DNA of 64,000 nucleotides, taken from IMG/VR virus record IMGVR_UViG_3300025770_000870, positions 124,001 through 188,000 of that record. One strand, written 5' to 3'. Below are positions 13,697-34,900 of the stretch, piece by piece. The first letter of the stretch is position 1. Each line of letters begins with the position of its first letter. The notes under the pieces were generated by a model, which saw nothing but the letters and a program-made list of their open reading frames with translations, did no database searches and was not told where the DNA came from. Both the position numbers and the translations under genes were made by a program.

Positions 13697-14455
13697 ATGC
13701 TAAATTATAAAGAGTATTTAAAGGAGGCCCAAGATAATCAAGTCGTTGTGTTGGATGATGGACAAGGTGGTAATATGTTTAAGACTGTTAAAAATGGTAG
13801 TAAGAACTCAATTACTTATCTTAATGCTGTTATAAAAAGGTTTATCGAAAGTGTTTATGGATCATCTGGGTTTGTTTATGGTAAACATACTGATATATTT
13901 ATCGATAATAAGATAATTAATGGTGAGTATATATCAAAGATGGTTAATAATTACACCATTTTTAAAAATGTGATAAGAATTAATAATATTAAAGAGGAAG
14001 AATCTTTTTATAATTTTATGTTATCTAATCTGAATAATATTTATTCACCAAATGGTAAATTCTTTTTAGAACAATCATTACCTATTTTAATAAACACAAC
14101 TAGAAGGGGAAATGTACTTGAAAAAATGGCTAAGGAATCCTTTTTAAAGTATTCTAAAGAAAAAGATATCGAGATTACTATACAAAACCCTTCTGTTGAT
14201 GAAGATATAAACGGTGTTGATTTCAAATTCTTATCCAATGGTAGAAGTTTTACTGTTCAAGTAAAGCCATTTACTGATTATAAGTATATTGGTGATAAAA
14301 TTTTCATAAAGACAGAAGGATCTTTATCATTGAATACAAACTACTTGATACTATGTGATGGTAAGAATTGTATTAAATTAAGAAATACACCCTCTAATCC
14401 AGTTAAAATAAAAGGTAATACTTTTATTTCAAGTAAATCTAATCTACTTATTTAA
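13697..14455 (+). CDS. PD-(D/E)xK-like nuclease-fold protein with CTS-like N-terminus
   Basis: EDINGVDFKF...FTVQVKP pattern; N-terminus MLNYKEYLKE; TTAATATATA at 13682-13691. Confidence 0.55.
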   Translation: MLNYKEYLKEAQDNQVVVLDDGQGGNMFKTVKNGSKNSITYLNAVIKRFIESVYGSSGFVYGKHTDIFIDNKIINGEYISKMVNNYTIFKNVIRINNIKEEESFYNFMLSNLNNIYSPNGKFFLEQSLPILINTTRRGNVLEKMAKESFLKYSKEKDIEITIQNPSVDEDINGVDFKFLSNGRSFTVQVKPFTDYKYIGDKIFIKTEGSLSLNTNYLILCDGKNCIKLRNTPSNPVKIKGNTFISSKSNLLI

Positions 14456-15770
14456 ATCCACCGAATATATCCATTACCACACTCAATCTTCTTGTTATTT
14501 CTGGCATACCTAATGGTTCAATAATAGAATTAATTGGTGATAGTATTGATTTCTCAAATTGTATATCATAATCTATCTCAGGAGCAAATTCAATCGGGTA
14601 AGACCCTCTAGCATAAGCAAATGTGGAATTAACTGATTTATCTTTACAGATATAATATTTAATCTTTGTACCAGATTTCATAAATTCATACTTATCTTGT
14701 AATTTCTTATCATTGTTCAATAAGTAATTATGATAAGCGGCCGCTTTAACAGCAAAGTGAGCTCCACTTATAAATTGTAATGGTAATGTTTTATCATTTA
14801 AAACTTTCTCATCATATTTATTACAAGATGATTGCATTGCGATATCATCAACATCAGCCAATTCAAATTCCTTTCTAAGACCTTTTACCAATTTAAGTAA
14901 ATCCTTTATATTGAATGTATCGGGATTCTCAAATAAATACTCTACTATCCCAACAATCTTATCACGAGCAAAGGCTGGTGTGGATGACCTAACAAGTTCA
15001 ACTCCTTTAGGATAAATATATTTCAATCTATCATATGGAATACCATCCTCATATAAAATATGTTGTATGTATTTTTTCTTAGCAATATTTATAATTGATT
15101 CTGATATTCTTTCAAGTTCAAAATCTTCTTTGTTTTCAACACCATATGATTCTGCGTGTTTATCTAAACAATCTTTGAAGTAACCCTCATATTTTATTTG
15201 GTCAACTCCTAATATAAAATCAACCTCAGTAGACCAGTTCCAGATAATATCATTTGTTAAAACTCCATCATCTATCATCTTATTTAACTTCCTATCTTTC
15301 ACGAAGTTACCATCTATTAAAACTAACCCATAATCTTCTTTCAGAAGTTCTGTAAATTCCGTGATATCTTTTGACATACCCAAATAATTTGGATTATCTG
15401 TTTCTATCAAATCTCTTGATAGTATAATAAATTTCTTATCAATTGAAGATAGATATTCATCGTTAAATACTTGATCTCTCCAAGTACAATGGTCCATACA
15501 AGGTTTGAATGAAACAAAAATTGAATCGGTATCACCATAGATACTAACATCCTCTTTCGTATCAATTGGTGTGATATCTTTTATATTTAATTGTTTGTGT
15601 AGCTCAGTATCAAGATGCCATTGATTATACCAATAATCTTGGTTATCATCATCCATCTTTCTAGTCAATTCTCTACCCTCTGCTGTTATAGTACCTGCAA
15701 CGTGGTTGTTATAAAGTATGAAGTATGGTGTTGCGAAGGCTCCATAAGAACCATTCAATACAAGTTTTAG
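14448..15770 (-). CDS. Family B DNA polymerase, C-terminal portion (second half of motif B, motif C and thumb); no usable start codon upstream of the invariant Lys
   Basis: LKLVLNGSYG (frame open up to an in-frame TGA at 15773-15771), GTITAEGR, YGDTDS, AKKKY, KGVELVRSS, YDIQFEK. Confidence 0.93.
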   Translation of the reverse strand, partial: LKLVLNGSYGAFATPYFILYNNHVAGTITAEGRELTRKMDDDNQDYWYNQWHLDTELHKQLNIKDITPIDTKEDVSIYGDTDSIFVSFKPCMDHCTWRDQVFNDEYLSSIDKKFIILSRDLIETDNPNYLGMSKDITEFTELLKEDYGLVLIDGNFVKDRKLNKMIDDGVLTNDIIWNWSTEVDFILGVDQIKYEGYFKDCLDKHAESYGVENKEDFELERISESIINIAKKKYIQHILYEDGIPYDRLKYIYPKGVELVRSSTPAFARDKIVGIVEYLFENPDTFNIKDLLKLVKGLRKEFELADVDDIAMQSSCNKYDEKVLNDKTLPLQFISGAHFAVKAAAYHNYLLNNDKKLQDKYEFMKSGTKIKYYICKDKSVNSTFAYARGSYPIEFAPEIDYDIQFEKSILSPINSIIEPLGMPEITRRLSVVMDIFGGFK

Positions 15771-16904: not shown

Positions 16905-17807
16905 TTAATAGATAATTGGTCCATCAAACCCCAAACGAACATTTTGACCATCAAACACAATTGTTTCCGTTATCTCAGAAGGCTTAAATGTATTTTTGTG
17001 ATAAACTTTCATTGGTCTTCTAAAGTCTTCTTCTGGTGGAGTATAGACATAATTAAAACACTCACATCCACCACCCGTTCTTTTCCAAGACTTGGTTAAA
17101 AAAAAGTTATCACCTATTAATTCCTTTATGTGAAAATAAATATAATTCTCTTTTGAGTATTCATTGATAGGCATTAAAGATACTAAACCAATATCATTTA
17201 TCTCAACAGAGTTTGCCCATTCTAAATATTTAAATACTTCTTCTGGTGTATCTATATAATTCTTTATTAAGTTACATCTGAATTGTACTTGGTGTGGATG
17301 TGTTTGTAAATGGCTTATAGCCTTTATCTCTTCTGATGTAGGAGTTTTGCATTTGAATATCTCATCATTAATCTTATCATCATAGTGGTGACGACTAAGT
17401 TGTATATAATCATATCTTTTAGCAATAGGGTCGTTAAATAACTTCTCCCATCTAAATCCGTCTGTATTCAGTGATAATTCACAATCAGGTGCATATTCCA
17501 CACCAACATTGGACATTTCCAGAAAATTATCCCAATATAAAGTTGGTTCTCCACCAGAAATGGCTATTTTTCTAATCTTAATTCTATCTGATATATGTTG
17601 TAAGACTTCTTTATATTTTTTACCGTTCCATTTGGATGCGTCTGAGTGATATGTACAGAATGAGCACTTAGCGTTACAGAATTTAGTTCTAACATAAAGA
17701 TTTATATAAGGTTCTTCAATGGCGTTTCCCTCCTCCTCTCCAAATAAGGCACAATTATGAGTTATTAGCTTAATTTCTTTCCCGAATAATTCGATTGATT
17801 CTAACAT
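16905..17807 (-). CDS. Radical SAM enzyme of unknown specificity
   Basis: CNAKCSFC (CxxxCxxC), SGGEPT, LNTDG, QLSRHHY. Confidence 0.88.
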   Translation of the reverse strand: MLESIELFGKEIKLITHNCALFGEEEGNAIEEPYINLYVRTKFCNAKCSFCTYHSDASKWNGKKYKEVLQHISDRIKIRKIAISGGEPTLYWDNFLEMSNVGVEYAPDCELSLNTDGFRWEKLFNDPIAKRYDYIQLSRHHYDDKINDEIFKCKTPTSEEIKAISHLQTHPHQVQFRCNLIKNYIDTPEEVFKYLEWANSVEINDIGLVSLMPINEYSKENYIYFHIKELIGDNFFLTKSWKRTGGGCECFNYVYTPPEEDFRRPMKVYHKNTFKPSEITETIVFDGQNVRLGFDGPIIY

Positions 17808-18096: not shown

Positions 18097-19116
18097 TTAT
18101 ATATTAAATTGTGAATTTACAATTTCAATAGATTTGCTTAATCTATCTCTCCAATTACCACCCACTTCTATATAATTACAATTGTACTTTTCCAATTCTG
18201 ATTTAATAACATTATAATGTTCCATCCTTTCTTCTAAAAACTGTCGTGTTCCGTCTTGAACACCATCACAATCAGGTTTCAATAGTAAGTATAAATCATA
18301 ATTACTATTTTTATATACTTTATCTAGTAATATGTTTTCAATACTTTTATAACCATTTGGAAAATACATTTTTGAGAAGAGGTATGTTGTTATATCCTCT
18401 GTATCACAGAATAATAATTTATTGGATGTCTTTATTTTTTGATTTTCCAATTCTTGTCGACCAACAGATATTGGGATAAAGTCTTCTATTCCTATTTTAT
18501 TACCATTTCTTTCAAATACAGTTCTGCCATATTCCTCAACAAAATTTGTGTTATAGTATTTAGCTAAATTTTCACTCATTGTTGATTTCCCAACAGATTC
18601 CGGCCCCATAATAACAATTCTCTTAACGAAGTAGGGTTTTATTTCATCCGGTATAAATTCCCAACTATCAAAGGGGTTAGTTCTTACTTTAGTTCCTGAT
18701 ATAGGAAATTTCTTTCTTTCTTTATCAACTAGATAGTGTTTTATACCCAAATATTTAGCAAAATCATCACCGTAATTCTCAGAAGTGAATACACAATCTA
18801 ATTTACCAACAAATTTATAAACAAATGGAACCCAATAAGAATAAAATTCATCAAGTGATTTACATTCGTGTTCATATTGTGGCATCTCACTATCATCAAC
18901 AGAGTGTATTATGACATTTGGGTTACTTTCATATATTTCTCGTAAAGATTTTACTCTTAATTTACCAGGGATTGTTTGTGTAGGATTATGACAAGCTAAA
19001 ACATGAACAACTTCCGAATTTTCCAAAGCGGTGTCTATTAAATAAAGGTGCCCGGTGTGTAATCCGTAGAATTTACCCAATACTAAACTACTTTTGTACT
19101 TTTTATCCATTTCCAT
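18097..19116 (-). CDS. nadR: Bifunctional NadR-type NMN adenylyltransferase and ribosylnicotinamide kinase
   Basis: GKFYGLHTGH (HxGH), FTSENYG, Walker A GPESVGKST, EEYGR, CDT, YDLYLLLKPD...DGTR; no HTH domain. Confidence 0.92.
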   Translation of the reverse strand: MEMDKKYKSSLVLGKFYGLHTGHLYLIDTALENSEVVHVLACHNPTQTIPGKLRVKSLREIYESNPNVIIHSVDDSEMPQYEHECKSLDEFYSYWVPFVYKFVGKLDCVFTSENYGDDFAKYLGIKHYLVDKERKKFPISGTKVRTNPFDSWEFIPDEIKPYFVKRIVIMGPESVGKSTMSENLAKYYNTNFVEEYGRTVFERNGNKIGIEDFIPISVGRQELENQKIKTSNKLLFCDTEDITTYLFSKMYFPNGYKSIENILLDKVYKNSNYDLYLLLKPDCDGVQDGTRQFLEERMEHYNVIKSELEKYNCNYIEVGGNWRDRLSKSIEIVNSQFNI

Positions 19117-19631
19117 AATCCAATTGATGCTAATATTAAGAATAAACCATATACATATGATGATACGTCTAAGCCATTTGATGAGAATAATACTATTAAT
19201 AGAATGTCATTTATAATCCAAAGAATCCAAGCTTCTATTTTCTTCTTCACTAATAGGAATGTAGCCATAACACCCAATGTCATTACAGCAGAGTCTAGAA
19301 ATGGCATATTACCACCATATTCACTTGTTATACAAAACGTGGTCATGTATAGAATAATGGTGCTGGTTGTTAGATATCCTAATTGCTTTTTATTTAACCA
19401 ACTAATAGCCAATTCTTCTTTTGGTTTGCTCCAGTTTATCCAACCTAGTATAGATTGGACTAGAAATACACCTTGTAAAACTAAATCACCAAGTAAGTTA
19501 TGGTTGTAAAAGATAACAGAGTAAAAGATAACTCCTACGATACCAAATGGCCAACATAATATGTTATCTTTTACTGTTAGAATAACAGCTAGTAACGTGA
19601 ATAAAACAGCTACTGCCTCAATAATATCCAT
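19083..19631 (-). CDS. pnuC: PnuC-family nicotinamide riboside or thiamine transporter
   Basis: Multiple TM helices; CWPFGIVG, GWINW, FLDSAVM, KKKIEAWILWIIND. Confidence 0.92.
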   Translation of the reverse strand: MDIIEAVAVLFTLLAVILTVKDNILCWPFGIVGVIFYSVIFYNHNLLGDLVLQGVFLVQSILGWINWSKPKEELAISWLNKKQLGYLTTSTIILYMTTFCITSEYGGNMPFLDSAVMTLGVMATFLLVKKKIEAWILWIINDILLIVLFSSNGLDVSSYVYGLFLILASIGLWKWIKSTKVV

Positions 19632-21613
19632 TAAATCTTAAATTTAATTGTAGCGAAGAAGTTGAATGGTGGATTAACAAAGAAGTGTCTATCTGTACCA
19701 ACTGCGTATCCATTAGTGTAATAACTTTCATTAGTTATGTTATTTACTCTAATACTTAAACTGTGTTGTTTATAGAATTTATAATCAACTTGAGCATTTA
19801 ATACCACAAAATCTGGTGTTGTGAGTGTGTTCTCCATATCAATATAAGACTCTGAGTGGTACTTCACATCAAATCCAACTCTTATTCTATCTTTTGAATC
19901 TTTAATCACCACACCTTGGTTAATTATCAAATTAGGTGTGTATAATGGACTAAATTCTTTCCCATCATCATTAATTCTGTTATAAGAGTATGATGATGTA
20001 TTAACTAATAATAAGTTAATTTTCTTTTTACTAAATAAACTTAAAGTCATATCTAATTCAATACCACTTCTAAAAGAGTTTTCAACATTAGTCATTAACG
20101 GTAAACCATTTGAACCAATTGCTCCTAATAATGTTATTTCATTTTTGAAATCCATATAGTATAGATTACCTTGTAACTTAAAGTTATCTAATGTTATATT
20201 AGTACCTAATTCATAATCAACAACCGATTCTGGTTTAACATCTATGTAACTAATAGGATCATCTTCTCCCATAAAAATATCATTTCTTGTTGGTTCTCTT
20301 TGTGATTGACCAACAGAAGCATAGAAGTTATAGTGTTTACATTTCGTGAACATTATACCACCTTTTGGGTTGAAGAATGTCCATTCAAATGGTGCCATAT
20401 CCATAGTACCTTGATACTTGAAATCAACGTATCTAACTTGAGCATCTCCGAAAAGAGTAAACTTCTTTATATCATATCCGAATTTAACAAATGATGATAC
20501 TTCGTTTTTAAGTCCTTTATTAGAATATAGTTCATCTGTGTTTGCTAATACAGTCATAGCATGTCGTCTATCATACATATTACCACTAACACCAATATTC
20601 AATCTATATTTATTACCAGTTAAGTTATAGTTAGAGGTTAATCCATAGAAGTTAGAACCTAAATTGAAGTTAAGAACATCATCCCCTCCACCAAGTGGTA
20701 GTAAATCTAATCCCCAATCTCCATCTAATCTATTATAGAAAGCGGTAGTCGTTAAATTTGACTTGTTAAAAAAGTGTTTGTGTTTTAAGATAACCATACT
20801 TTGTGTAAAGTCGTCATTTTCTCTAGTAGTATTATAGTTAGTTCTTGGTTCTGATTTTATATCATCTTCTGAAACTGCGAACCAAGCCATTTCATTAGTT
20901 GTGTGTCCATTGAATGCTGTTATTTTAACAAAATCCTTTTCTCCATAATAACCACCACTTAAAAAGAATGATTGTCCTTCACCACCTGAGTTATATTTGT
21001 ATCCATCACTCGCGTAATTTGAATATCTAGTATAAAAGGCTGTTTTATTTTTTAGTAATCCTGTTGAGTTTTCAATACTAACTCTATAAGTATTAAATGA
21101 TCCATATCCAATTTGTCCTTCTGTTCCTTTCTTTAATCCCGTTGGTGATTCAAAATTAATAGAACCAGCATATGAGGAAACACCGTTTGTTGATGTACCA
21201 ACACCACGTTGTATCTGCATTGACCTAATTGAGTTTGTAAAATCTGGGTAATTTGAGAAATATACACCTTGGTCCTCTGGTTCATTAAGAGGAACCCCAT
21301 CGAGTGTCATATTAATTCTAGTTTGGTCAATACCTCTCAATCTAAAGTAAGTATATCCCATATTGTGACCGCCATCTGTTGATGATGTTACACTTGGTGT
21401 TGTGTTTAATAACAACGGTAATTCTTGTGTATGATACATAACATCTATATCATCTTTACTGATTGTTTTCTGAGTGACTGGTGTTTTAGATCCAGCTCTA
21501 ATTCCTTGTATAGTAACTTCTTCAATTTGCACCATTGATGTGTCAACCTTTAGAGTATCCTGTGAATACGATGTTGATGTTGCTAATAAAAATAAAAATA
21601 GTAATTTCTTCAT
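19631..21613 (-). CDS. TonB-dependent outer-membrane receptor (Bacteroidota vitamin-uptake type)
   Basis: Signal peptide; plug with GYTYFRLRGIDQTRIN...QIQRGVGTSTNG; beta-barrel ending in alternating aromatic residues; 1-nt overlap with pnuC. Confidence 0.92.
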   Translation of the reverse strand: MKKLLFLFLLATSTSYSQDTLKVDTSMVQIEEVTIQGIRAGSKTPVTQKTISKDDIDVMYHTQELPLLLNTTPSVTSSTDGGHNMGYTYFRLRGIDQTRINMTLDGVPLNEPEDQGVYFSNYPDFTNSIRSMQIQRGVGTSTNGVSSYAGSINFESPTGLKKGTEGQIGYGSFNTYRVSIENSTGLLKNKTAFYTRYSNYASDGYKYNSGGEGQSFFLSGGYYGEKDFVKITAFNGHTTNEMAWFAVSEDDIKSEPRTNYNTTRENDDFTQSMVILKHKHFFNKSNLTTTAFYNRLDGDWGLDLLPLGGGDDVLNFNLGSNFYGLTSNYNLTGNKYRLNIGVSGNMYDRRHAMTVLANTDELYSNKGLKNEVSSFVKFGYDIKKFTLFGDAQVRYVDFKYQGTMDMAPFEWTFFNPKGGIMFTKCKHYNFYASVGQSQREPTRNDIFMGEDDPISYIDVKPESVVDYELGTNITLDNFKLQGNLYYMDFKNEITLLGAIGSNGLPLMTNVENSFRSGIELDMTLSLFSKKKINLLLVNTSSYSYNRINDDGKEFSPLYTPNLIINQGVVIKDSKDRIRVGFDVKYHSESYIDMENTLTTPDFVVLNAQVDYKFYKQHSLSIRVNNITNESYYTNGYAVGTDRHFFVNPPFNFFATIKFKI

Positions 21614-22009: not shown

Positions 22010-22798
22010 TTAAATATCATCCTCTTCAAAATCTTGTTCGAAGCTAAGCATCAAATTAGATTCTTCATCTTTAACTAACATAAAGGTTTCGAATATACTG
22101 AATGTGATTTTTTCTCTCTCAGCGTTTATGCAATTTAAAAACCTTTTATTAAAAATAAGGTTAGAACTTCTATCATCTTCTAAGTTATCGACTTCTAAAT
22201 CCCAAGCTGATTTTTCAGAGAAGTTAACAATACCTTTATCGATACCAATATTTATAATTCTCTCTGAGTTAATACTTGAAAGTTTTTTAATATCAGTGAA
22301 ATCATCTTTCGTAAGAGCGAATGACCATTTACTATTTTTTAGATTTAAGTTCTTAGCTAACATTTCTTTATTGATTTCTCTAGTTTCATTATTGTGTTCT
22401 CCACCAACCCAATTAATCTTAAATCGACCACAAGATACTTGGAAATATCTTACTTGATAAATGTCTCTATCATCGGCTGATGGTTTATAATTAAATTCTA
22501 TTGTTACTTTATCCGGATCCTTGATCATACCAAGGTTCTTAACAAATTTCTTGATATTAGGTATGACTAAATCTAATTGATAATCTAGGTCATCGTTTTT
22601 TATGAGAAATTCATCTGTTGGTATTAAATAGTTTTTGAAGGCGAGTAATATATTCTTACCTAAGATAGAATACATTAATACATCATCATTATCTATTTTC
22701 AACCTAACACTATCATCAATAGTTGATAAATCACTTAATTTAGAAACAAATGTATTAAATGTGTCTCCGTTTATTTTAAATTTTACTTTATTCGCCAT
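22010..22798 (-). CDS. Sliding clamp-like protein (T4 gp45-like)
   Basis: 262 aa; two-domain pattern with FALTKDDFTDIKKLSSI; context of clamp loader and PolB. Confidence 0.6.
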   Translation of the reverse strand: MANKVKFKINGDTFNTFVSKLSDLSTIDDSVRLKIDNDDVLMYSILGKNILLAFKNYLIPTDEFLIKNDDLDYQLDLVIPNIKKFVKNLGMIKDPDKVTIEFNYKPSADDRDIYQVRYFQVSCGRFKINWVGGEHNNETREINKEMLAKNLNLKNSKWSFALTKDDFTDIKKLSSINSERIINIGIDKGIVNFSEKSAWDLEVDNLEDDRSSNLIFNKRFLNCINAEREKITFSIFETFMLVKDEESNLMLSFEQDFEEDDI

Positions 22799-23195: not shown

Positions 23196-23576
23196 GATAG
23201 GTTTAACGTGTTCGTTAATTATTCTTTCAACTTCCTTTAACTTCTTTCTCGTAGTTTTAACATCTAATTGAATTCTCCAATTTCTAACAAGTACATCATC
23301 ATCATCTGGAATTTCTTCGATTATTATATCGAAGTCTTCATCTTCCTTTAAAATTTCAAAGAAATTCTCATCACTTTCAAAAGAAGTCTTAAATTCTTTC
23401 ATTGTCTTTTCATCAATCTGTTGATAAGCACCATAAGGATCTAGAACCTCATATGTACCATTTTCGTTTGGTTCAAATATATGACCTTTTTCATAAATGA
23501 CCTTTTCCTTTGAAAGGCCCATAAAATCAGTCTTTATACACCAATCTTCTTTTGATATAAATCTAGGATACTTCAT
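23184..23576 (-). CDS. Hypothetical protein
   Basis: 130 aa ORF with phage-typical codon usage. Confidence 0.7.
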   Translation of the reverse strand: MKYPRFISKEDWCIKTDFMGLSKEKVIYEKGHIFEPNENGTYEVLDPYGAYQQIDEKTMKEFKTSFESDENFFEILKEDEDFDIIIEEIPDDDDVLVRNWRIQLDVKTTRKKLKEVERIINEHVKPILNT

Positions 23577-23600
23577 TTTTAATTTGTTTTTTATAAAATA

Positions 23601-24098
23601 TTAACTACGACCTAAATAGTTCATTAATTCAATCATATTCTTTATTGAATATGAAAAGCTTTCAAGATTTCTTACGGTGTCTCTTAAAAATTCTATATAT
23701 GATTCTATTAATTCCATACATCTATCATTCTCGGCTAGGTGACCGTCTATTAAAATACCCTTTTCTCCTAAATTGGTTTTCATACCAAAACCCGTTGCAT
23801 AAAAAACAAATTTATCTTGTCTAAGTTTCTTTATCTTAGTCGTTTCTCTACTACGTTTATTTAAAAAGAAGTTAATTTGTTCGTTAATTTGTTGTCTGTG
23901 TGTGAGAGCGTTAGCTTGAGCATCAAGTAATGGTTTAGCATTTGAGGGAATACTTAAATCCAAAGAAAGTACTTGAAATAATGGTTCCACATTTTTATTC
24001 CAATCTGTTCTTTTGTCATTAAAGAAGTCTTCTAATTTATCATTAGTCTCCTTTGCTTTTTTGATTCTCTCTAATTCTTCTTGGTTATATGGGTTCAT
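23601..24098 (-). CDS. UvsY-like recombination mediator
   Basis: Helical 165 aa with a C-terminus IESYIEFLRDTVRNL..FSYSIKNMIELMNYLG resembling UvsY. Confidence 0.55.
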   Translation of the reverse strand: MNPYNQEELERIKKAKETNDKLEDFFNDKRTDWNKNVEPLFQVLSLDLSIPSNAKPLLDAQANALTHRQQINEQINFFLNKRSRETTKIKKLRQDKFVFYATGFGMKTNLGEKGILIDGHLAENDRCMELIESYIEFLRDTVRNLESFSYSIKNMIELMNYLGRS

Positions 24099-24175
24099 AC
24101 TTAAATATTTTTTTCATTTGTTAATCATACCTTTTATGTCTTTATCTATGTTTTGATTTAAATATTTTTCAAAAT

Positions 24176-24454
24176 TTATTTATTTATTTCATCCATAATC
24201 TTTGAGATTTTGAAATCTCTTATGATTTTAATTGTTGAATTATCGATACCCTCATATATATCATTTGATGAGTGACCATTATTATTGATAATATTTAATA
24301 CTGATATTAATGATTCTCCCATCTCATCTAGATGTTGATTGATAATATTCTTCTTATTAATATTATTATTTTTTATATAATCAGAAATTATAATTATATG
24401 TGATGTTAGGTAATCAAGGTATTCATTAATTTCTAACTCTGTTGGTTCTTGCAT
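24176..24454 (-). CDS. Small hypothetical protein with C-terminal RDFKI motif
   Basis: 92 aa ending KIIRDFKISKIMDE. Confidence 0.65.
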   Translation of the reverse strand: MQEPTELEINEYLDYLTSHIIIISDYIKNNNINKKNIINQHLDEMGESLISVLNIINNNGHSSNDIYEGIDNSTIKIIRDFKISKIMDEINK

Positions 24455-24520
24455 ATGTATCGAATTTTATCTAAAAATGGGTATTTTGTTTATTATATAT
24501 ACTAAAAATAAAAGTATCTT

Positions 24521-25252
24521 ATGAGTATAACAATAGGAAACCTTAAAAGGGTTATGAAAAACAAAGGATATAAATGGTATACAGATAGACCTAATATGAT
24601 AGGAGTGAGAACCACATTAGATATACCAGATTCGTTTAATGATTTCTTCTGTATGGTTTATTCTATCCCAGAAATGCCTTCTACTTTATCATTAAAACAA
24701 AAACAATCTTTTTTAAATAATTGGGGATTTATAGGAGCCAATGGTAGAAAATTATCGGAGGATGGTGTTAGTGGTAAAAATACTGATTATGCTATTTCTC
24801 AATATGAATCTAAGAAGGGAAAAGAAGATTTAAAAATATTTCCGAATACAACTAACCCTGGGGTTTATTGGTTAAACCACCCTATGAATAAAATGGGATC
24901 AGCTGTTCTTAAACCTGGTCAATGGGAAGATTGTTGGTCTCGTGGACAACACATAAAGCCTAGTCATAGAGCATTAAGACAAACTGGTAAGATAACAGTT
25001 TATAGAGATAATGATAAAGATAATAATTATGACTTGAATGAGTCTAATACACAAAATGGTTTATTTGGTATAAATATTCATGGTTCTGGTAGAAAGTACC
25101 CTTCTAAACAAATTGGTAAATGGTCTGCTGGTTGTCAAGTTTTCTCTAATTGGGAACATAAAGAGTTTGTGATGGATGTTTGTGATAATTTCAAAGCACA
25201 CACTGGTAATAAATTTACTTATACATTAATAGATGAAGTTGATTTAGTTTAA
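24521..25252 (+). CDS. Putative peptidoglycan hydrolase (YkuD/Tlde1-like fold) with an inserted PG-binding-like module
   Basis: GLFGINIH...WSAGCQV catalytic His/Cys pattern; insert LKQKQSFLNNWGF...DGVSGKNTDYAI. Confidence 0.65.
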   Translation: MSITIGNLKRVMKNKGYKWYTDRPNMIGVRTTLDIPDSFNDFFCMVYSIPEMPSTLSLKQKQSFLNNWGFIGANGRKLSEDGVSGKNTDYAISQYESKKGKEDLKIFPNTTNPGVYWLNHPMNKMGSAVLKPGQWEDCWSRGQHIKPSHRALRQTGKITVYRDNDKDNNYDLNESNTQNGLFGINIHGSGRKYPSKQIGKWSAGCQVFSNWEHKEFVMDVCDNFKAHTGNKFTYTLIDEVDLV

Positions 25253-25266
25253 AACTAAAATAAAGT

Positions 25267-25297
25267 AAAAACCCACTCAGATTTTGAGTGGTTTTTT
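25267..25297. terminator. Bidirectional intrinsic terminator
   Basis: AAAAACCCACTCA-gattt-TGAGTGGTTTTTT. Confidence 0.8.
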
Positions 25298-25619
25298 ATG
25301 CTTTTTTATTTATTTTGTCATATAACTTTTTGAAATGATCTCTTATCATTCTTTTAGTAACTTCTTCTAAAGATAAAATGTTATTAACTTCGTTAAGAAA
25401 ATCTTCTAATCCTAAATCATCCATGAATTCTTTGGTGAATTCTTTGTTTAATTCTCTTAGTATTGTTCTTGAATCTATTTTCTTATCCATGTTCAAAAGT
25501 ATAGAAGTTCTATATTCTTTTAATCTAAATAATAAATTATCATTTATCTGTGATAATGTATTTTCATCCAAATCAGACATTTTTAATTCTTCGTTAAACT
25601 TTTTGAAATTATAAATCAT
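25296..25619 (-). CDS. Hypothetical protein with CTS-like N-terminus
   Basis: Likely start 25619, giving MIYNFKKFNEE; the ORF track starts at 25655. Confidence 0.7.
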   Translation of the reverse strand: MIYNFKKFNEELKMSDLDENTLSQINDNLLFRLKEYRTSILLNMDKKIDSRTILRELNKEFTKEFMDDLGLEDFLNEVNNILSLEEVTKRMIRDHFKKLYDKINKKA

Positions 25620-30215: not shown

Positions 30216-31838
30216 ATGGCACAAAACATAGGTACATTAGTTTCATCAGCAATCAGACCCAATGATTCATTAGATCCAATTGCGTCAGCTTTTTCTAGTG
30301 AGATAAAAGGTGGATTACATACAGTGGTATCAAGTGGTGATAGAGATGATACTATATTTGAGAGAAGAGAATGGGGTATGATGTGTTACATTATCAATGA
30401 TAAAAAAACATATCAATTAGAGTATAATTATGCGGATACTGATATAATGAACAACTCTAATTGGATTGAATTTAGTGGATCTGGTGGAGGTGGTGGAAGC
30501 GAATGGGTTGATTCTGTGTTTTCAGTTTTGTTAACTGAGCCAACGATAGGGCCCGGGTCACCAACAAGTGGTGATAGATATTTAGTAGGTACTAAACCCA
30601 CCGATGTCGTTTCTGGTACTAATTGGTCAGTTATATCTCCTGGATTTGTAGCTGAGTGGAATTCAGCTTTAATGTCTTGGGATATCACATATCCAACTGA
30701 GGGTATGTCTGTTAGGGTAGATGATGAAGATAATTCCATTTATAAATATGAAACGGATGGTGGATTAAATAATTATCCGAATGGAACTTGGGAAAAGGAA
30801 AAATTAGGACAAGTTAGATCAATAGATGCTAATTTCACCGGAGGGTTTAGTTATTCAACAACATCTGATCCTGAATTTTCAGGATATATAAAAGATATGT
30901 TATTCCTTACCAAATTTGATACAGTTAATTCCGGAGTAACAGCTTCATTGGATGTAAATGGATTGGGTAATGTTTTAATAAAAAAATCAACATCGGGTGG
31001 TGTTATAAACTTAAACCCATTTGATATAAAAACAGACATTGTTTATAGTTTAGTTTATGATGGTACATATTTTCAATTAAACAAACCTTCAAATGATGAT
31101 TTATTTAATGTTAAATATTATATAGAACCTACTGATTATATAGTTGTTCCTCAATATTATCAATATTGGGTTTATGGAGATTTAACCATTGATGGTTGGA
31201 TGGAAAATTACGGACAAGTTGTTATCGCTAATGGTTCACTTATTAACACTGGAACTTTTTCCAATTTTGGATCCTTATCATTTATTAGTTTTGACTCTGG
31301 AACTGGATCAACCCCATCAGTAACATCATATTCTGATACAGACACGATAGATTTTGATATTTTTGTAGCACCACTTGGTCCCTCGGTATCAGCTTTCATT
31401 AAAAATGATTCACTAACGGCTTCACACTTAAACACTGGATCTTCCGGTGGAGCAACTGCTGGATATGTATTATCTGTTGATGAATCAGGATTATTTAACT
31501 GGAAAGGCGGAGGAGGAGGAGCTTTATCGTATTCTGATAAAAGTTATGTAATGAGTACTAATACTAGTGGTGACGGTTCACCTACTGGATTGGTTATATC
31601 AAATACACCTCTTGTAAATTCTTATGTTGGTGTTTTTATAAATGGTCAAGAATTTCAAGTTGGTTTTGGTACAACTTCTAGCGTTCCATGTTATTTTAGT
31701 GATGATGGTGGAACAACTGCTAAAACATCAACTTCACCTAATAATGTACAGATAGGTGACGAATTATATTGGAATGGAGTTGTAGTTGGAATGGATTTAT
31801 TCACTACTTGGAGGATTTCATTATTTTATCAAGAATAA
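30216..31838 (+). CDS. Structural fibre or appendage protein
   Basis: 540 aa; C-terminal domain paralogous to that of 31917-35105. Confidence 0.65.
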   Translation: MAQNIGTLVSSAIRPNDSLDPIASAFSSEIKGGLHTVVSSGDRDDTIFERREWGMMCYIINDKKTYQLEYNYADTDIMNNSNWIEFSGSGGGGGSEWVDSVFSVLLTEPTIGPGSPTSGDRYLVGTKPTDVVSGTNWSVISPGFVAEWNSALMSWDITYPTEGMSVRVDDEDNSIYKYETDGGLNNYPNGTWEKEKLGQVRSIDANFTGGFSYSTTSDPEFSGYIKDMLFLTKFDTVNSGVTASLDVNGLGNVLIKKSTSGGVINLNPFDIKTDIVYSLVYDGTYFQLNKPSNDDLFNVKYYIEPTDYIVVPQYYQYWVYGDLTIDGWMENYGQVVIANGSLINTGTFSNFGSLSFISFDSGTGSTPSVTSYSDTDTIDFDIFVAPLGPSVSAFIKNDSLTASHLNTGSSGGATAGYVLSVDESGLFNWKGGGGGALSYSDKSYVMSTNTSGDGSPTGLVISNTPLVNSYVGVFINGQEFQVGFGTTSSVPCYFSDDGGTTAKTSTSPNNVQIGDELYWNGVVVGMDLFTTWRISLFYQE

Positions 31839-31916: not shown

Positions 31917-34900
31917 ATGGCATTATTAGATGGTAAGCAAATGAGAGATAACTCACTCTCATTAGATAAATTAAATGGATCCAGTGGTTTAGTTACTTTC
32001 ACTTCTGCAACAATGAGTTTTTCTACGGGTGCTTTTTTAAGAACATCCGATGATAATATTTTAGATGGATTAGATGTTGTTAATAAAAATTATGTTGATT
32101 CTGTTTCATCTGGATTAAATCCAAAAGAATCTTCTACTGCTATTTATGAGGATGACGTTGCATCAGAGACAGGATATGTATATAATAATGGTGCTTCTGG
32201 AGTTGGAGCTACATTAACATTTACAAACGTTAATAGTCTTGATTTTGATGGTGTTACACTATCTGTAACCTCACCACTAACAAGAGTTATTATAAATTCT
32301 AACACAGACACATTTGTGAATGGTATTTATGATGTTACTAGTTTGACAGTACTTACAAGATCTACTGACTTTGATGGTTCTCCATCTCAAGAGGTTGATG
32401 GTGGTGAATATTCATTCGTTACGGAAGGTAGTTTATATGCTGATACAGGATGGGTTGTTTCCTCTCCTAATAGCACAGCTACAATAGGAACAACTCCAAT
32501 TATTTGGACTCAATTCTCATCTGCTGGTGTTGTACAAGCTGGATCTGGATTAACAAAAACCGGTAACACATTAAATGTTGGATCTGGAACAGGATTATCA
32601 GCATCATCAACAGAAGTTTTTCTTGAAGATACATCCGTTACTCCTACTACTTATGGTGCTGATGATACAATACCAACATTTACAGTAGATCAACAAGGTA
32701 GATTAACATCAGCGAGTGATGTTACGATTGATATAACGGCATCTCAAGTAAATGATTTTACATCCGCTTCAGAAACAGCTATCTTTACAGATGCGAATTT
32801 TGTGGATGGTATAACAGTCACATTCTCAGTAACACCTGGGTCCGATATTACTGCTGAAGTAGTTGATGGTTCGTTAGGAACTGTTAAACTTGATGCTAGT
32901 GGTGGAGCAACTGCTGGTTATTCTTTACTATCAAACGGAACAGGATTTGATTGGGTTCTTAACGCAGGAGACATATCAGCAGTTACTGCTGGAGCCGGAT
33001 TAACTGGTGGTGGTTCGTCAGGAGCGGTTTCATTATCTGTTAATGTTTCTAATGGTTTAAATTTAGATGGCGATGATGTTGAATTAGGTGGTACATTAGA
33101 TAAGACAACAACAATAGATACTGATGGTAATGTTTTAGATATAACAAATGTGGCTGATTCATACACTTTGATGAAAAATCAGAACCTAGCGGATAAATCT
33201 GGTACATTTAGTACACTTTCTATTGGTTCTGATATTGATAATGGTATTTCGGAACCTTCGACTAATAGAGTTGATGATTTACAAGTGGAAGCAGACTCAG
33301 TTTATATCATCGGCGCGAGTGATAGTAGTAATTTAGGATTTTTAAATATAAATAAAGAACAAGGTACTTTAGGCGTAGATGCACCTGGAGGACAATCATC
33401 AATTAACATATTGGCAACTCAGATGTTAGTAGGTGATACTTTAAATCTAACAGGTTTAAAGTATCAAGCTGATTACTCATCTAACTATACTGATCGTTCT
33501 TTAGTTGATAAAGAATATGTTGATGATGCTATTTCAATAGTTACTGGATCAGATATCGATGAAGTTACTGCTGGTGCTGGTTTAAGTGGAGGTGGTACTC
33601 AAGGAGTTGTTACTTTAGATGTTAATGTTAATGCTGACTCTATGGAGATAGTAACTGATGTTATTAGATTAAAAAATACTATTACAGGAGATAGAACATT
33701 TGCTGATTCGGTTATCGTATCAGGAAACTTAACAATTGCTGGAACAGCAACTTATGTAAATACAGAAAATCTTTATGTAGTTGATAATACTATTACATTG
33801 AACGCTACTTATAGTGGTTCTCCATCAGCAGTACCTTATTCAGGTATCGAAATTAACTTAGGTGATGGTACATATTCTACATTTTTACACGAAGAATCAA
33901 CTGGGTATTTTGTTGGTGGTGTTTCTGGATCAGAATCAGCATTTATACAAGAAGCTGGTACAGGATTAACAAAAACTGGTAATGCACTATCTGCTGATTT
34001 AACAGAAATTGCTGAATCAACACAAGGTGCTGGATTAACAGCAAGTGCCGGTGTTATTAATGTTGGTCAAGGAACTGGTATTACAGTAAATGTTGATGAT
34101 GTGGCAATTGATTTTGTTTCAATCACTGGTAATGGTTTAACACAATCGGGTGGAGTTATTAATGTTGATGTTGATAATACAACAATTCAAATTGTAAATG
34201 GTGAATTAGTCGCTACTACATTGGGTGATATACAAGGAGTTACTGCTGGTGCTGGTTTAAGTGGAGGAGGTGATTCTGGATTTGTTACTTTAGATGTTAA
34301 TCTTGGAGTTGATGGTGGTTTAACATTCTCTAGTGATGATATAGTAGTTGATGAGGCTAACTTTAATTATACGATAATAAATACTAACTTACAAGGAAAT
34401 GGTTTAACTGCAAATGGTGTAGTTCTTGACGTAAATACTGGAAATGGTTTAACAATCAATTCTGATGTTGTTGAAGCTGACTTATTATCTAATGGAGGTT
34501 TAACATTCTCTAGTGGCCAAATTGAAGTATCTGTTGATAATAGTACAATAACAATTATAGATGGTGAATTAGTTGCTTCTGCACAAGGAGATATTACGGG
34601 AGTTACAGCCGGATCTGGTTTAAGTGGAGGTGGTAATTCTGGATTCTTACAGATGGATGCTGATATTACCGCACAAGGTGGTTTAACATTCTCAGGAGTT
34701 ATTGTTGATAACAACAGCACTTTACAAGTTGAAACTGATGGTACAACTATAACAGTTAATGCAAGTGGTCAATTAGAAGCAATTGGTACAACAGCTCAAC
34801 CAGTTTATAATCAAATGAATGAAACTTCTGTATTAACTACACCAAACACTGATAATGTTAGTACACAAATTGCTATCGCGAACCCACCATCTAAATATTC

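What the first reader, a model, noticed from the sequence alone, without database searches (positions are those of the whole stretch)
18097..21613. Complete envelope-spanning vitamin import and NAD salvage operon: TonB-dependent receptor, PnuC and NadR
Seen: three translationally coupled genes (1-nt and 34-nt overlaps) encode an outer-membrane TBDR, an inner-membrane PnuC and a NadR with both kinase and adenylyltransferase motifs. Established: PnuC plus NadR convert external nicotinamide riboside to NMN and then NAD. Vibriophage KVP40 encodes pnuC and nadR. In Bacteroidota this TBDR type normally sits with a PnuC-like permease and thiamine pyrophosphokinase. Many antiphage systems (Thoeris, SIR2 and TIR effectors) deplete NAD. 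Inference: the phage has rewired a thiamine-type uptake cassette for NAD precursors and added its own outer-membrane importer. That could refill NAD from outside the cell, a different route from the intracellular NAD-reconstitution pathways. A phage-borne TBDR is itself unusual.
Basis: partly seen in the sequence, partly recalled or inferred. Interest (0 to 1): 0.75.

Follow-up and report, generated by a model that had tools for sequence, protein, structure and literature searches.

The report
Megaphage carries a two-membrane NAD-precursor import operon
A huge marine phage carries a complete three-gene unit, copied whole from Bacteroidota bacteria, that should pull a vitamin-B3 nucleoside through both host membranes and turn it into NAD; this adds an outer-membrane step to a phage NAD-restoring pathway described only in 2026.

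Summary
On the minus strand lie a 660-aa TonB-dependent receptor (19631-21613), a 182-aa PnuC (19083-19631) and a 339-aa HTH-less NadR (18097-19116), overlapping by 1 and 34 nt. The window is a phage: a marine megaphage whose near-identical copy is 483 kb, 81% identical across the triad to the 635-kb LR745206.

The closest cellular homologues are Bacteroidota. In 61 of the 80 best loci the receptor is followed directly by PnuC and NadR in the same order. In the sister clade it sits inside an NrtR-Prs-NAMPT-ADP-ribosylglycohydrolase NAD cluster. TPP-riboswitch-linked receptors and PnuT from the same bacterial genomes form separate clades (29-30% and 22-25% identity). The three gene trees are broadly congruent, so the phage captured an existing NAD-precursor operon whole.

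The triad recurs in complete 360-kb phage genomes and in the 642- and 735-kb phages. Lak phages hold all three genes within about 9 kb. dN/dS between two phages is 0.09-0.15. PnuC+NadR alone is the experimentally shown phage pathway NARP3; the receptor is the extra part. Substrate, TonB dependence and anti-defence role are inferred. I rate it a new variant of a known kind, of moderate interest.

The parts
19631..21613 (-). TonB-dependent receptor/transporter, 660 aa, of the NadR-linked (NAD-precursor) clade of Bacteroidota
   Evidence: Pfam Plug plus barrel. AF2 model pLDDT 86, pTM 0.84. Foldseek gives full-length TonB-dependent transporter matches, best PqqU at TM 0.82. The tree places it apart from TPP-linked receptors. 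dN/dS is 0.09 against LR745206.
21563..21613 (-). Sec signal peptide (residues 1-17, MKKLLFLFLLATSTSYS) followed by Gln18
   Evidence: Read from the translation. Gln18 is at least 90% conserved in alignments A1 and A2. Gln at +1 fits the Bacteroidetes 'Q-rule' for signal peptidase I substrates; that rule is from my own knowledge.
21503..21523 (-). TonB-box-like strand EEVTIQG just before the plug domain
   Evidence: Sequence. The consensus LxxVxVTGVRA is conserved in A1. The assignment rests on motif resemblance only.
19083..19631 (-). PnuC-family inner-membrane facilitator, 182 aa
   Evidence: PF04973 at 7.2e-45 covering profile positions 2-175 of 175. TIGR01528 is above its cut-off. Aligns to N. 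mucosa PnuC 4QTN including the WxxW segment. Separated from TPP-linked PnuT by a long 100* branch. dN/dS 0.15.
18097..19116 (-). NadR-type bifunctional NMN adenylyltransferase / ribosylnicotinamide kinase, 339 aa, no HTH domain
   Evidence: Best PDB matches are NadR 8x7f and 1lw7 (E about 1e-43) and 9x6f. PHROG 3462 at 3.8e-79. dN/dS 0.11.
19048..19077 (-). NMNAT nucleotide-binding motif GKFYGLHTGH (HxGH)
   Evidence: Aligned to GKFYPLHTGH / GKFYPVHTGH of solved NadR structures.
18682..18702 (-). NMNAT second motif ISGTKVR (ISxTxxR)
   Evidence: Aligned to ISGAQIR / VSATKIR of solved NadR structures.
18580..18606 (-). Kinase-domain Walker A GPESVGKST
   Evidence: Aligned to GGESSGKST of solved NadR structures. 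Walker B-like FCDTED lies at 18394-18411 and the lid DGTR at 18238-18255.

Best explanation
The three genes are a host-derived (Bacteroidota) operon for scavenging an NAD precursor, carried and maintained by a marine megaphage of the Mahaphage/Lak lineage. Proposed mechanism: the receptor is exported by Sec, inserted into the host outer membrane and energised by the host TonB-ExbBD. It captures nicotinamide riboside, or a closely related pyridine nucleoside or nucleotide, at low external concentration. PnuC lets the nucleoside diffuse across the inner membrane. The NadR kinase domain traps it as NMN, and the adenylyltransferase domain makes NAD+. The net effect is to raise or restore NAD in the infected cell from an external source, independently of whether the host has such a route. 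That would serve the phage against NAD-depleting defences, as shown for the two-gene phage pathway NARP3, or meet a general NAD demand during a long infection, or both. Shown here: gene identity, catalytic motifs, orthology to NadR-linked Bacteroidota operons, separation from thiamine systems, spread in complete phage genomes, and purifying selection. Inferred: substrate, TonB dependence, outer-membrane insertion during infection, and purpose.
For: Identity and motifs. Phage context. An identical triad with identical flanks occurs in 154-kb and 483-kb IMG/VR contigs. The triad is also present in two roughly 360-kb records with direct terminal repeats and CheckV 100%. Cellular orthologues: 73 of the 80 best loci are labelled Bacteroidota, and 61 of 80 show contiguous receptor-PnuC-NadR. 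In the sister clade the operon reads NrtR-Prs-?-deoxyribosyltransferase-like-NAMPT-ADP-ribosylglycohydrolase-receptor-PnuC-NadR. In the 735-kb phage LR756501 the triad is flanked by NAPRTase, NAD synthase and an isochorismatase. Several IMG/VR phages have PncB upstream. The trees are broadly congruent. The receptor (94) and NadR (100*) trees recover the same phage-plus-bacteria clade, and the PnuC tree recovers a similar but weakly supported group (80) that lacks L023. dN/dS between two phage genomes is 0.09, 0.15 and 0.11 at dS about 1. The PnuC+NadR function and its anti-Sir2-HerA role were shown experimentally for T5-like coliphages (PMC13464706). The window's NadR is 32% identical to that of phage TrudiRoth. 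Short pieces identical to the receptor gene occur in marine metatranscriptome libraries.
Against: No member of this receptor clade has a known substrate, and nothing was found in the searched literature. There is no close solved structure by sequence. NadR scores below the NCBIfam equivalog cut-off (228 against 341 bits). No TonB, ExbB, NAMPT/NAPRTase, NadE or NAD-dependent ligase was found in the 242-kb record; the 483-kb twin was searched only for NAPRTase and TonB_C and has neither. Function therefore depends on host parts, and no obvious phage NAD consumer was identified. The RNA-library evidence cannot exclude DNA carry-over. It is untested whether a new outer-membrane barrel can be assembled in useful amounts during an infection. 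The anti-defence purpose is by analogy only.
Confidence: 0.7

Rival explanations
1. One reading: the phage took a thiamine-type receptor/PnuT cassette, swapped thiamine pyrophosphokinase for NadR, and so retargeted it to NAD precursors.
For: TPP-riboswitch-linked receptor and PnuT pairs do exist in Bacteroidota. They are the nearest paralogues seen: the receptors are about 30% identical.
Against: Orthologues of the phage genes already occur as receptor-PnuC-NadR in bacteria. No TPP riboswitch was found at those loci or in the window. TPP-linked receptors and PnuT form separate 100* clades. The receptor and NadR trees are congruent, so the unit moved whole.
Confidence: 0.03
2. The receptor is not primarily a nutrient importer in the phage. 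It remodels the infected cell surface, for example by excluding superinfecting phages or masking receptors. The pnuC-nadR pair works independently with host porins or receptors.
For: The preprint on huge-phage outer-membrane proteins proposes receptor-level interference for phage OMPs in general. In Lak phages the receptor is separated from nadR-pnuC by about 5.5 kb of other genes.
Against: The tight 1-nt overlap with pnuC and the gene order are conserved across many phages and bacteria. The receptor co-evolves with NadR. In bacteria the same clade is embedded in NAD regulon-like clusters. The plug domain and TonB-box-like strand are intact and under strong purifying selection.
Confidence: 0.1
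3. The transport and enzyme assignment is right, but the receptor's ligand is not nicotinamide riboside. It could be NMN, NAD+ or another pyridine compound that is processed in the periplasm before PnuC, or nicotinamide feeding a different route.
For: No substrate is known for this clade. In Haemophilus, NAD and NMN cross the outer membrane and are trimmed to NR in the periplasm (own knowledge). The bacterial sister operons also contain NAMPT and ADP-ribosylglycohydrolase.
Against: No periplasmic nucleotidase is encoded beside the triad; the flanking ORFs lack signal peptides. The minimal conserved unit is receptor-PnuC-NadR, whose last two parts act on NR.
Confidence: 0.2
4. The triad is bacterial DNA wrongly joined to a phage contig (assembly chimera or mis-binning).
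For: The genes are typically cellular. Several homologous contigs are filed under bacterial MAG names.
Against: The same triad with the same flanking phage genes occurs in independent assemblies at 100%, 96% and 81% identity. GC matches the flanks. The stretch is present in at least 16 metagenome runs from several studies. The triad is present in terminal-repeat-bounded complete phage genomes.
Confidence: 0.01

Closest known systems
NARP3 (phage PnuC-like Bas30_87 plus NadR-like Bas30_86 of Escherichia phage TrudiRoth; Sci Adv 2026, PMC13464706)
   Same: Adjacent PnuC-type transporter and HTH-less bifunctional NadR in a phage. NadR is 32% identical over 84% of its length, and the likely NARP3 enzyme structure 9x6f is among the best PDB matches. 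The expected chemistry is the same: NR to NMN to NAD.
   Different: NARP3 has two genes and no outer-membrane component. Here a TonB-dependent receptor is fused into the operon upstream. The origin is Bacteroidota rather than the sources reported for NARP3, and the carrier is a megaphage rather than a T5-like phage. Anti-defence activity is untested here.
Bacteroidota receptor-PnuC-NadR operons, some inside NrtR/Prs/NAMPT clusters (e.g. Chitinophaga, Flammeovirga, Zobellia, Mucilaginibacter, Flavobacterium, Prevotella, Dysgonomonas loci L011-L088)
   Same: Same three genes in the same order, with 40-48% receptor identity and congruent receptor and NadR trees. This is the evident source of the phage genes.
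   Different: They are cellular and sometimes regulated with NrtR and NAMPT genes that the phage locus lacks. Among 300 other sampled Bacteroidota species only 3 had a close match, so the operon is sporadic. I found no experimental study of it.
Thiamine uptake cassette of Bacteroidota (TPP riboswitch, TonB-dependent receptor 'OMthi', PnuT)
   Same: Same architecture: a small TonB-dependent receptor followed by a PnuC-family facilitator for a vitamin.
   Different: It has a TPP riboswitch upstream. The receptors are 29-30% and PnuT 22-25% identical to the phage proteins and form separate clades. No NadR is present.
TonB-dependent receptors of Lak and other huge phages (bioRxiv 10.64898/2026.10.24.761521)
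   Same: 22-stranded receptors encoded by Bacteroidota-infecting megaphages. That survey noted NMN-transporter genes as neighbours of some phage OMPs, and the Lak receptor is transcribed. Lak receptors are 29-31% identical to this one.
   Different: In Lak the receptor is followed by DUF4407 and other genes, with NadR and PnuC about 5.5-6.5 kb further on and in reversed order. In the passages I read, the preprint does not interpret the triad as an NAD pathway.
PqqU/YncD and BtuB (solved cofactor-importing TonB-dependent transporters)
   Same: Best structural match of the AF2 model is PqqU at TM 0.82 over the full length. It shares the small receptor size typical of cofactor importers.
   Different: Only about 15% sequence identity, and no shared ligand-binding residues can be claimed.

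Membership tests
TonB-dependent transporter (TBDT) | N-terminal plug domain inside a 22-stranded beta-barrel | tested here: met
   Pfam Plug covers profile positions 4-106 of 107 and the barrel 17-436 of 436. AF2 pLDDT 86. Foldseek gives TM 0.7-0.82 to many solved TonB-dependent transporters over the full length.
TonB-dependent transporter (TBDT) | Cleavable signal peptide for export | tested here: met
   Residues 1-17 have a basic N-terminus, a hydrophobic core and Ser-rich end, followed by conserved Gln18. This is by inspection; no predictor was run.
TonB-dependent transporter (TBDT) | TonB box and energy coupling to TonB-ExbBD | tested here: inconclusive
   A conserved EEVTIQG strand precedes the plug. 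No TonB or ExbB is in the phage record. Coupling itself is not testable here.
PnuC family (PF04973 / TIGR01528) | Full-length match above the curated cut-off | tested here: met
   PF04973 scores 153.5 bits against a cut-off of 27.3; TIGR01528 scores 88 bits against 42.45.
PnuC family (PF04973 / TIGR01528) | Nicotinamide riboside (not thiamine or riboflavin) specificity | tested here: inconclusive
   It clusters with NadR-linked PnuC and is separated from TPP-linked PnuT by a 100* long branch. The WxxW segment aligns with 4QTN. No transport data exist.
NadR-type bifunctional NMNAT/RNK | HxGH and ISxTxxR motifs of the adenylyltransferase domain | tested here: met
   GKFYGLHTGH and ISGTKVR align to solved NadR structures.
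NadR-type bifunctional NMNAT/RNK | Walker A/B and lid of the ribosylnicotinamide kinase domain | tested here: met
   GPESVGKST, FCDTED and DGTR align to solved NadR structures. Pfam AAA_28 at 2.7e-29.
NadR-type bifunctional NMNAT/RNK | Score above the NCBIfam equivalog cut-off (TIGR01526 / NF005988) | tested here: not met
   228 bits against 341 and 186 bits against 201. It is a divergent member; PHROG 3462 scores 3.8e-79.
NadR-type bifunctional NMNAT/RNK | N-terminal HTH repressor domain (enterobacterial trifunctional NadR) | tested here: not met
   The protein starts at the NMNAT domain, matching NF005988 profile positions 61-405 of 411. The NARP3 enzyme likewise lacks the HTH domain; by my own knowledge H. 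influenzae NadR does too.
NARP3 phage NAD-reconstitution pathway | Adjacent phage-encoded PnuC-like transporter and NadR-like enzyme | tested here: met
   Overlapping genes in a phage genome. Homology to the TrudiRoth enzyme.
NARP3 phage NAD-reconstitution pathway | Restores NAD depleted by an NADase defence system | not testable with these tools
   This needs infection or co-expression experiments.
Thiamine receptor-PnuT cassette | TPP riboswitch upstream | tested here: not met
   No Rfam match in window 16-24 kb at E up to 1, and none at 10 orthologous bacterial loci. The same genomes do have TPP riboswitches elsewhere.
Thiamine receptor-PnuT cassette | Membership of the TPP-linked receptor and PnuT clades | tested here: not met
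   Separate 100* clades, with identities of 29-30% and 22-25%.

The most novel reading that the evidence does not exclude
The receptor clade is the so far unrecognised high-affinity outer-membrane importer for nicotinamide riboside (or NMN/NAD) of Bacteroidota. Megaphages carry it together with PnuC and NadR as a self-sufficient, two-membrane version of NARP3. An infected cell can then rebuild NAD from trace external precursor even when the host lacks this route, which most sampled Bacteroidota appear to. This would be the first virus-encoded TonB-dependent nutrient importer tied to a defined metabolic or counter-defence pathway.
Probability: 0.35. Interest if true: 0.75.

Novelty: new variant of a known kind. 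Interest (0 to 1): 0.55.

Why it matters
If the receptor imports an NAD precursor, it assigns a substrate to an uncharacterised clade of TonB-dependent transporters in Bacteroidota. It would also show that phages can equip the host outer membrane, not only the cytoplasm and inner membrane, for their own metabolic needs. It extends the newly described phage NAD-restoring route NARP3 to diderm hosts whose outer membrane relies on TonB-dependent uptake of vitamins. It offers a concrete, conserved function for one of the many 'cellular' genes that make megaphage genomes so large. The phage is widespread in seawater metagenomes, so the unit may also affect B3-vitamer cycling.

Tried and rejected
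- Rfam scans found no riboswitch (TPP, NAD+-I/II or other) upstream of the triad in the window or at 10 bacterial loci. The only window hit, CRISPR-DR44 at 19616-19643 (E 0.21), is below threshold and taken as chance.
- Sigma-70 promoter and terminator scans over 16.5-24.5 kb gave no more sites than shuffles. A Bacteroidota-type TTTG/TAnnTTTG promoter pattern gave 1 match against 3.6 expected. Transcription-unit borders are therefore undefined.
- Alternative genetic code: long-ORF coverage is 0.74 under code 11 against 0.76 with TAG or TGA read through, so there is no sign of recoding. TAG=Q was used only for Lak loci, where it is established.
- Searches of the 242-kb record found no NadE, NAPRTase/NAMPT, NAD-dependent ligase, TonB_C or ExbB. 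The 483-kb twin, searched only for NAPRTase and TonB_C, has neither.
- PDB sequence search for the receptor gave only distant hits.
- Four literature searches for a described receptor-PnuC-NadR system found nothing relevant.
- Flanking ORFs up262, up119 and dn86 have no Pfam, NCBIfam or PHROG match and no signal peptide. I do not count them as part of the system.
- Metatranscriptome contigs covering parts of the genes are only weak evidence of expression.
- No complex prediction was run: the host TonB is unknown, and jobs with a ligand as partner give no verdict.
Full report
**1. What is in the sequence**

On the minus strand lie three ORFs. The first, 19631-21613, encodes 660 aa; the second, 19083-19631, 182 aa; the third, 18097-19116, 339 aa.
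- The first stop and second start share one base (TAATG).
- The third ORF starts 34 nt inside the second, and a second in-frame ATG would give 28 nt.

ORF 1 has a Plug domain and a complete TonB-dependent-receptor barrel.
- It has a typical signal peptide (residues 1-17), then a Gln that is at least 90% conserved among homologues, then a conserved EEVTIQG strand before the plug.
- An AlphaFold2 model built on 56 homologues has pLDDT 86 and pTM 0.84.
- The model superposes over its full length on solved TonB-dependent transporters. The best match is the PQQ importer PqqU at TM 0.82, with about 15% identity.

ORF 2 matches the whole PnuC profile (7.2e-45) and passes the NCBIfam PnuC cut-off.

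ORF 3 is a NadR without the HTH domain.
- Its best solved relatives are NadR 8x7f and 1lw7 (E about 1e-43).
- The HxGH and ISxTxxR motifs of the adenylyltransferase domain are all in place, as are Walker A, Walker B and the lid of the kinase domain.
- It scores below the NCBIfam equivalog cut-offs, so it is a divergent member.

**2. The carrier is a phage**

- The window encodes a large terminase, a tail sheath, a virion protein, a helicase, SbcD and part of a family-B polymerase.
- GC is 0.30 across the triad and its flanks.
- The record is a 242-kb IMG/VR fragment. A 483-kb IMG/VR contig (CheckV 98%) and a 154-kb one carry the identical triad with identical flanks.
- The closest GenBank record is the 634,780-bp LR745206, at 81% nucleotide identity over the whole triad.
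- Next come the 642-kb and 735-kb genomes of the same study and the Prevotella Lak phages.
- That study predicts Bacteroidetes hosts for the phages above 634 kb and places them with Lak in the 'Mahaphage' clade (PMC7162821).
- The stretch is held by at least 16 marine, seawater or brine metagenome runs from several studies.
- There is no sign of stop-codon recoding.

**3. Where the genes come from**

A scan of one genome per prokaryotic species returned 421 relatives of the receptor. Of the best 80 loci:
- 73 are labelled Bacteroidota. They include isolates of Chitinophaga, Flammeovirga, Mucilaginibacter, Flavobacterium, Zobellia, Dysgonomonas, Hymenobacter and others, with receptor identity of 40-48%.
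- In 61 the receptor is followed directly by PnuC and then NadR.
- Nine more have NadR downstream without a detectable PnuC there, 7 have neither, and 3 loci are too short to tell.

The gene order in the phage is therefore the order already used by bacteria.

In the bacterial clade nearest the phage (L014, L016, L017, L059) the triad is the tail of a longer cluster. That cluster reads NrtR, PRPP synthetase, an unknown gene, a deoxyribosyltransferase-like gene, NAMPT and ADP-ribosylglycohydrolase. NrtR-prs-nadV is a known NAD regulon architecture (PMC2330246).

In the 735-kb phage the triad is flanked by NAPRTase, NAD synthase and an isochorismatase. Several IMG/VR phages have PncB upstream. 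This context links the receptor clade to NAD metabolism.

The operon is sporadic in the phylum. Only 3 of 300 other sampled Bacteroidota species gave a match at E of 1e-120 or better. Only four candidates per genome were scored, so this is a lower bound.

**4. Test of the thiamine idea**

- No TPP riboswitch or any other Rfam family was found at ten orthologous bacterial loci or in the window.
- The same bacterial genomes do contain TPP riboswitches. Four of these are followed by a TonB-dependent receptor, and two of those also by a PnuC-family gene.
- Those receptors are 29-30% and those PnuT proteins 22-25% identical to the phage proteins. The NadR-linked copies from the same genomes are 40-43% and 33-37% identical.
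- In maximum-likelihood trees the TPP-linked receptors and PnuT fall outside a 100*-supported group that holds all NadR-linked and phage sequences.
- The thiamine cassette is thus a paralogous system with the same architecture, not the ancestor of this locus.

**5. The unit moves as a whole and is kept by selection**

- The receptor tree and the NadR tree recover the same mixed clade. It holds the window's phage group, LR756502, and the L014-L017/L023/L025/L029/L032/L059 bacteria, with support of 94 and 100*.
- The PnuC tree gives a similar group without L023, with weak support (80).
- In the receptor and NadR trees the 735-kb phage copy groups elsewhere, with a Chitinophagaceae sequence; its PnuC is on a long, unresolved branch. 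This suggests at least two acquisitions, but long branches make it tentative.
- The window's receptor lies in a 17-member clade of phage and metagenome sequences (100*). Some members are filed under non-Bacteroidota MAG names and are probably mis-binned phage contigs.
- Two members of this clade are roughly 360-kb genomes with direct terminal repeats.
- Of 32 IMG/VR contigs with a receptor relative, at least 24 have NadR and at least 17 have PnuC within 4 kb.
- Lak phages at first looked like exceptions. They in fact carry NadR and PnuC about 5.5-6.5 kb downstream of the receptor.
- Between the window and LR745206, both phages, dN/dS is 0.09 for the receptor, 0.15 for PnuC and 0.11 for NadR at dS about 1. 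All three are under purifying selection while resident in phages.
- Short contigs identical to parts of the receptor gene occur in two marine metatranscriptome libraries, and slightly divergent ones cover all three genes in two others. DNA carry-over cannot be excluded.

**6. How it most likely works**

The steps below are inferred from family knowledge unless marked otherwise.
- The receptor is exported and assembled in the host outer membrane. It uses the host TonB system, because no TonB or ExbB is found in this phage.
- It binds an NAD precursor at low concentration.
- PnuC passes nicotinamide riboside through the inner membrane.
- NadR phosphorylates it to NMN and adenylates NMN to NAD.
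- The last two steps and their ability to undo NAD depletion by Sir2-HerA were shown for the phage pair Bas30_87/Bas30_86, named NARP3 (PMC13464706). The window's NadR is 32% identical to that enzyme's relative in phage TrudiRoth.

The purpose here could be counter-defence, general NAD supply in a long megaphage infection, or both. I cannot separate these. The receptor's actual ligand (NR, NMN or NAD) is unknown.

**7. What is new**

- NadR homologues occur in 799 and PnuC homologues in 395 of 50,697 phage records. The receptor occurs in 24, all megaphages or gut fragments.
- PnuC and NadR in jumbo phages are described (PMC11662467; PMC9503650).
- An October 2026 preprint catalogues beta-barrel outer-membrane proteins of huge phages. 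It includes a transcribed Lak TonB-dependent receptor and mentions NMN-transport genes among OMP neighbours.
- I found no text that treats receptor-PnuC-NadR as one pathway, assigns this receptor clade to NAD precursors, or traces it to the Bacteroidota operon.
- I therefore rate it a new variant of a known kind: NARP3-like salvage extended by an outer-membrane step, captured ready-made from the host phylum.

**8. Verdict**

The functional reading, external NAD-precursor salvage across both membranes, is well supported by homology, context, phylogeny and selection. The 'rewired thiamine cassette' story is not supported. Interest is moderate (0.55). The idea is testable and would give a substrate to an orphan transporter clade. 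But the core pathway is now known, and phage-encoded receptors have just been catalogued.

Noticed in passing
window 14448-15758 (-) and G000:C1:234929-235213 (+), outside the window: The family-B DNA polymerase seems split into two distant genes. The window ORF (436 aa, TTG start) matches only the C-terminal polymerase part (PHROG 262 profile positions 520-839 of 856). The exonuclease-domain match lies in a 515-aa ORF about 97 kb away on the other strand.
   Followed up: partly
G000:C1:27939-28943 (-) = L105:1396-2400; G000:C1:95908-96453 (-) = L104:1441-1986: Elsewhere in the same phage record there is a 334-aa ORF with weak NadM-like matches (NMN adenylyltransferase N-terminus plus Nudix). 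There is also a 181-aa ADP-ribose-pyrophosphatase-like Nudix protein. Both score far below the curated cut-offs. They may be further NAD/ADP-ribose metabolism genes.
   Followed up: partly
LR756501.1: L002 2001-10474; TonB_C at record 470226-470459 (-): The 735-kb phage has an NAD island: NAPRTase, NAD synthase, receptor, an extra 205-aa ORF, PnuC, NadR, and an isochorismatase (nicotinamidase-like). Elsewhere it encodes a 268-aa ORF with a TonB C-terminal domain (E 4.9e-23), so it may bring its own TonB.
   Followed up: partly
MK250016.1 (Lak-A1) 23575-25575, 31138-31773, 31925-32464; likewise MK250020.1 and IMG/VR L129 record: Lak phages carry the receptor, then DUF4407 and other genes, then NadR and PnuC about 5.5-6.5 kb downstream on the same strand in reversed order. 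All three functions are therefore present in one neighbourhood, but not as a tight operon.
   Followed up: partly
L014 1025-9517, also L016, L017, L059: The bacterial sister loci form a long putative NAD operon: NrtR, PRPP synthetase, unknown, nucleoside deoxyribosyltransferase-like, NAMPT, ADP-ribosylglycohydrolase, receptor, PnuC, NadR. L023 has the glycohydrolase between the receptor and NadR.
   Followed up: partly
window 16905-17807 (-): A radical-SAM protein lies two genes downstream of NadR, with weak HxsC-like and prokaryotic-viperin-like matches (53.8 and 46.8 bits, far below cut-offs). Homologues sit near the triad in LR756502 (opposite strand) and IMG/VR L118. Its function and any link to the triad are unknown.
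   Followed up: no
L008, L009, L010, L025, L034, L069: Several contigs with phage-clade or Bacteroidota-type triads are filed in MAGs labelled Deltaproteobacteria, CSSED10-310, Thalassovita, Hydrocarboniphaga, Staskawiczbacteria or Marinamargulisbacteria. They are probably mis-binned phage or Bacteroidota contigs.
   Followed up: no
window 23601-24098 (-), 24521-25252 (+), 22010-22798 (-): Neighbours include a weak UvsY-like match, an endolysin-like protein (PHROG 3000/33083), and a 262-aa acidic-tailed protein of unknown function. The last is strongly conserved with LR745206 (dN/dS 0.04).
   Followed up: no
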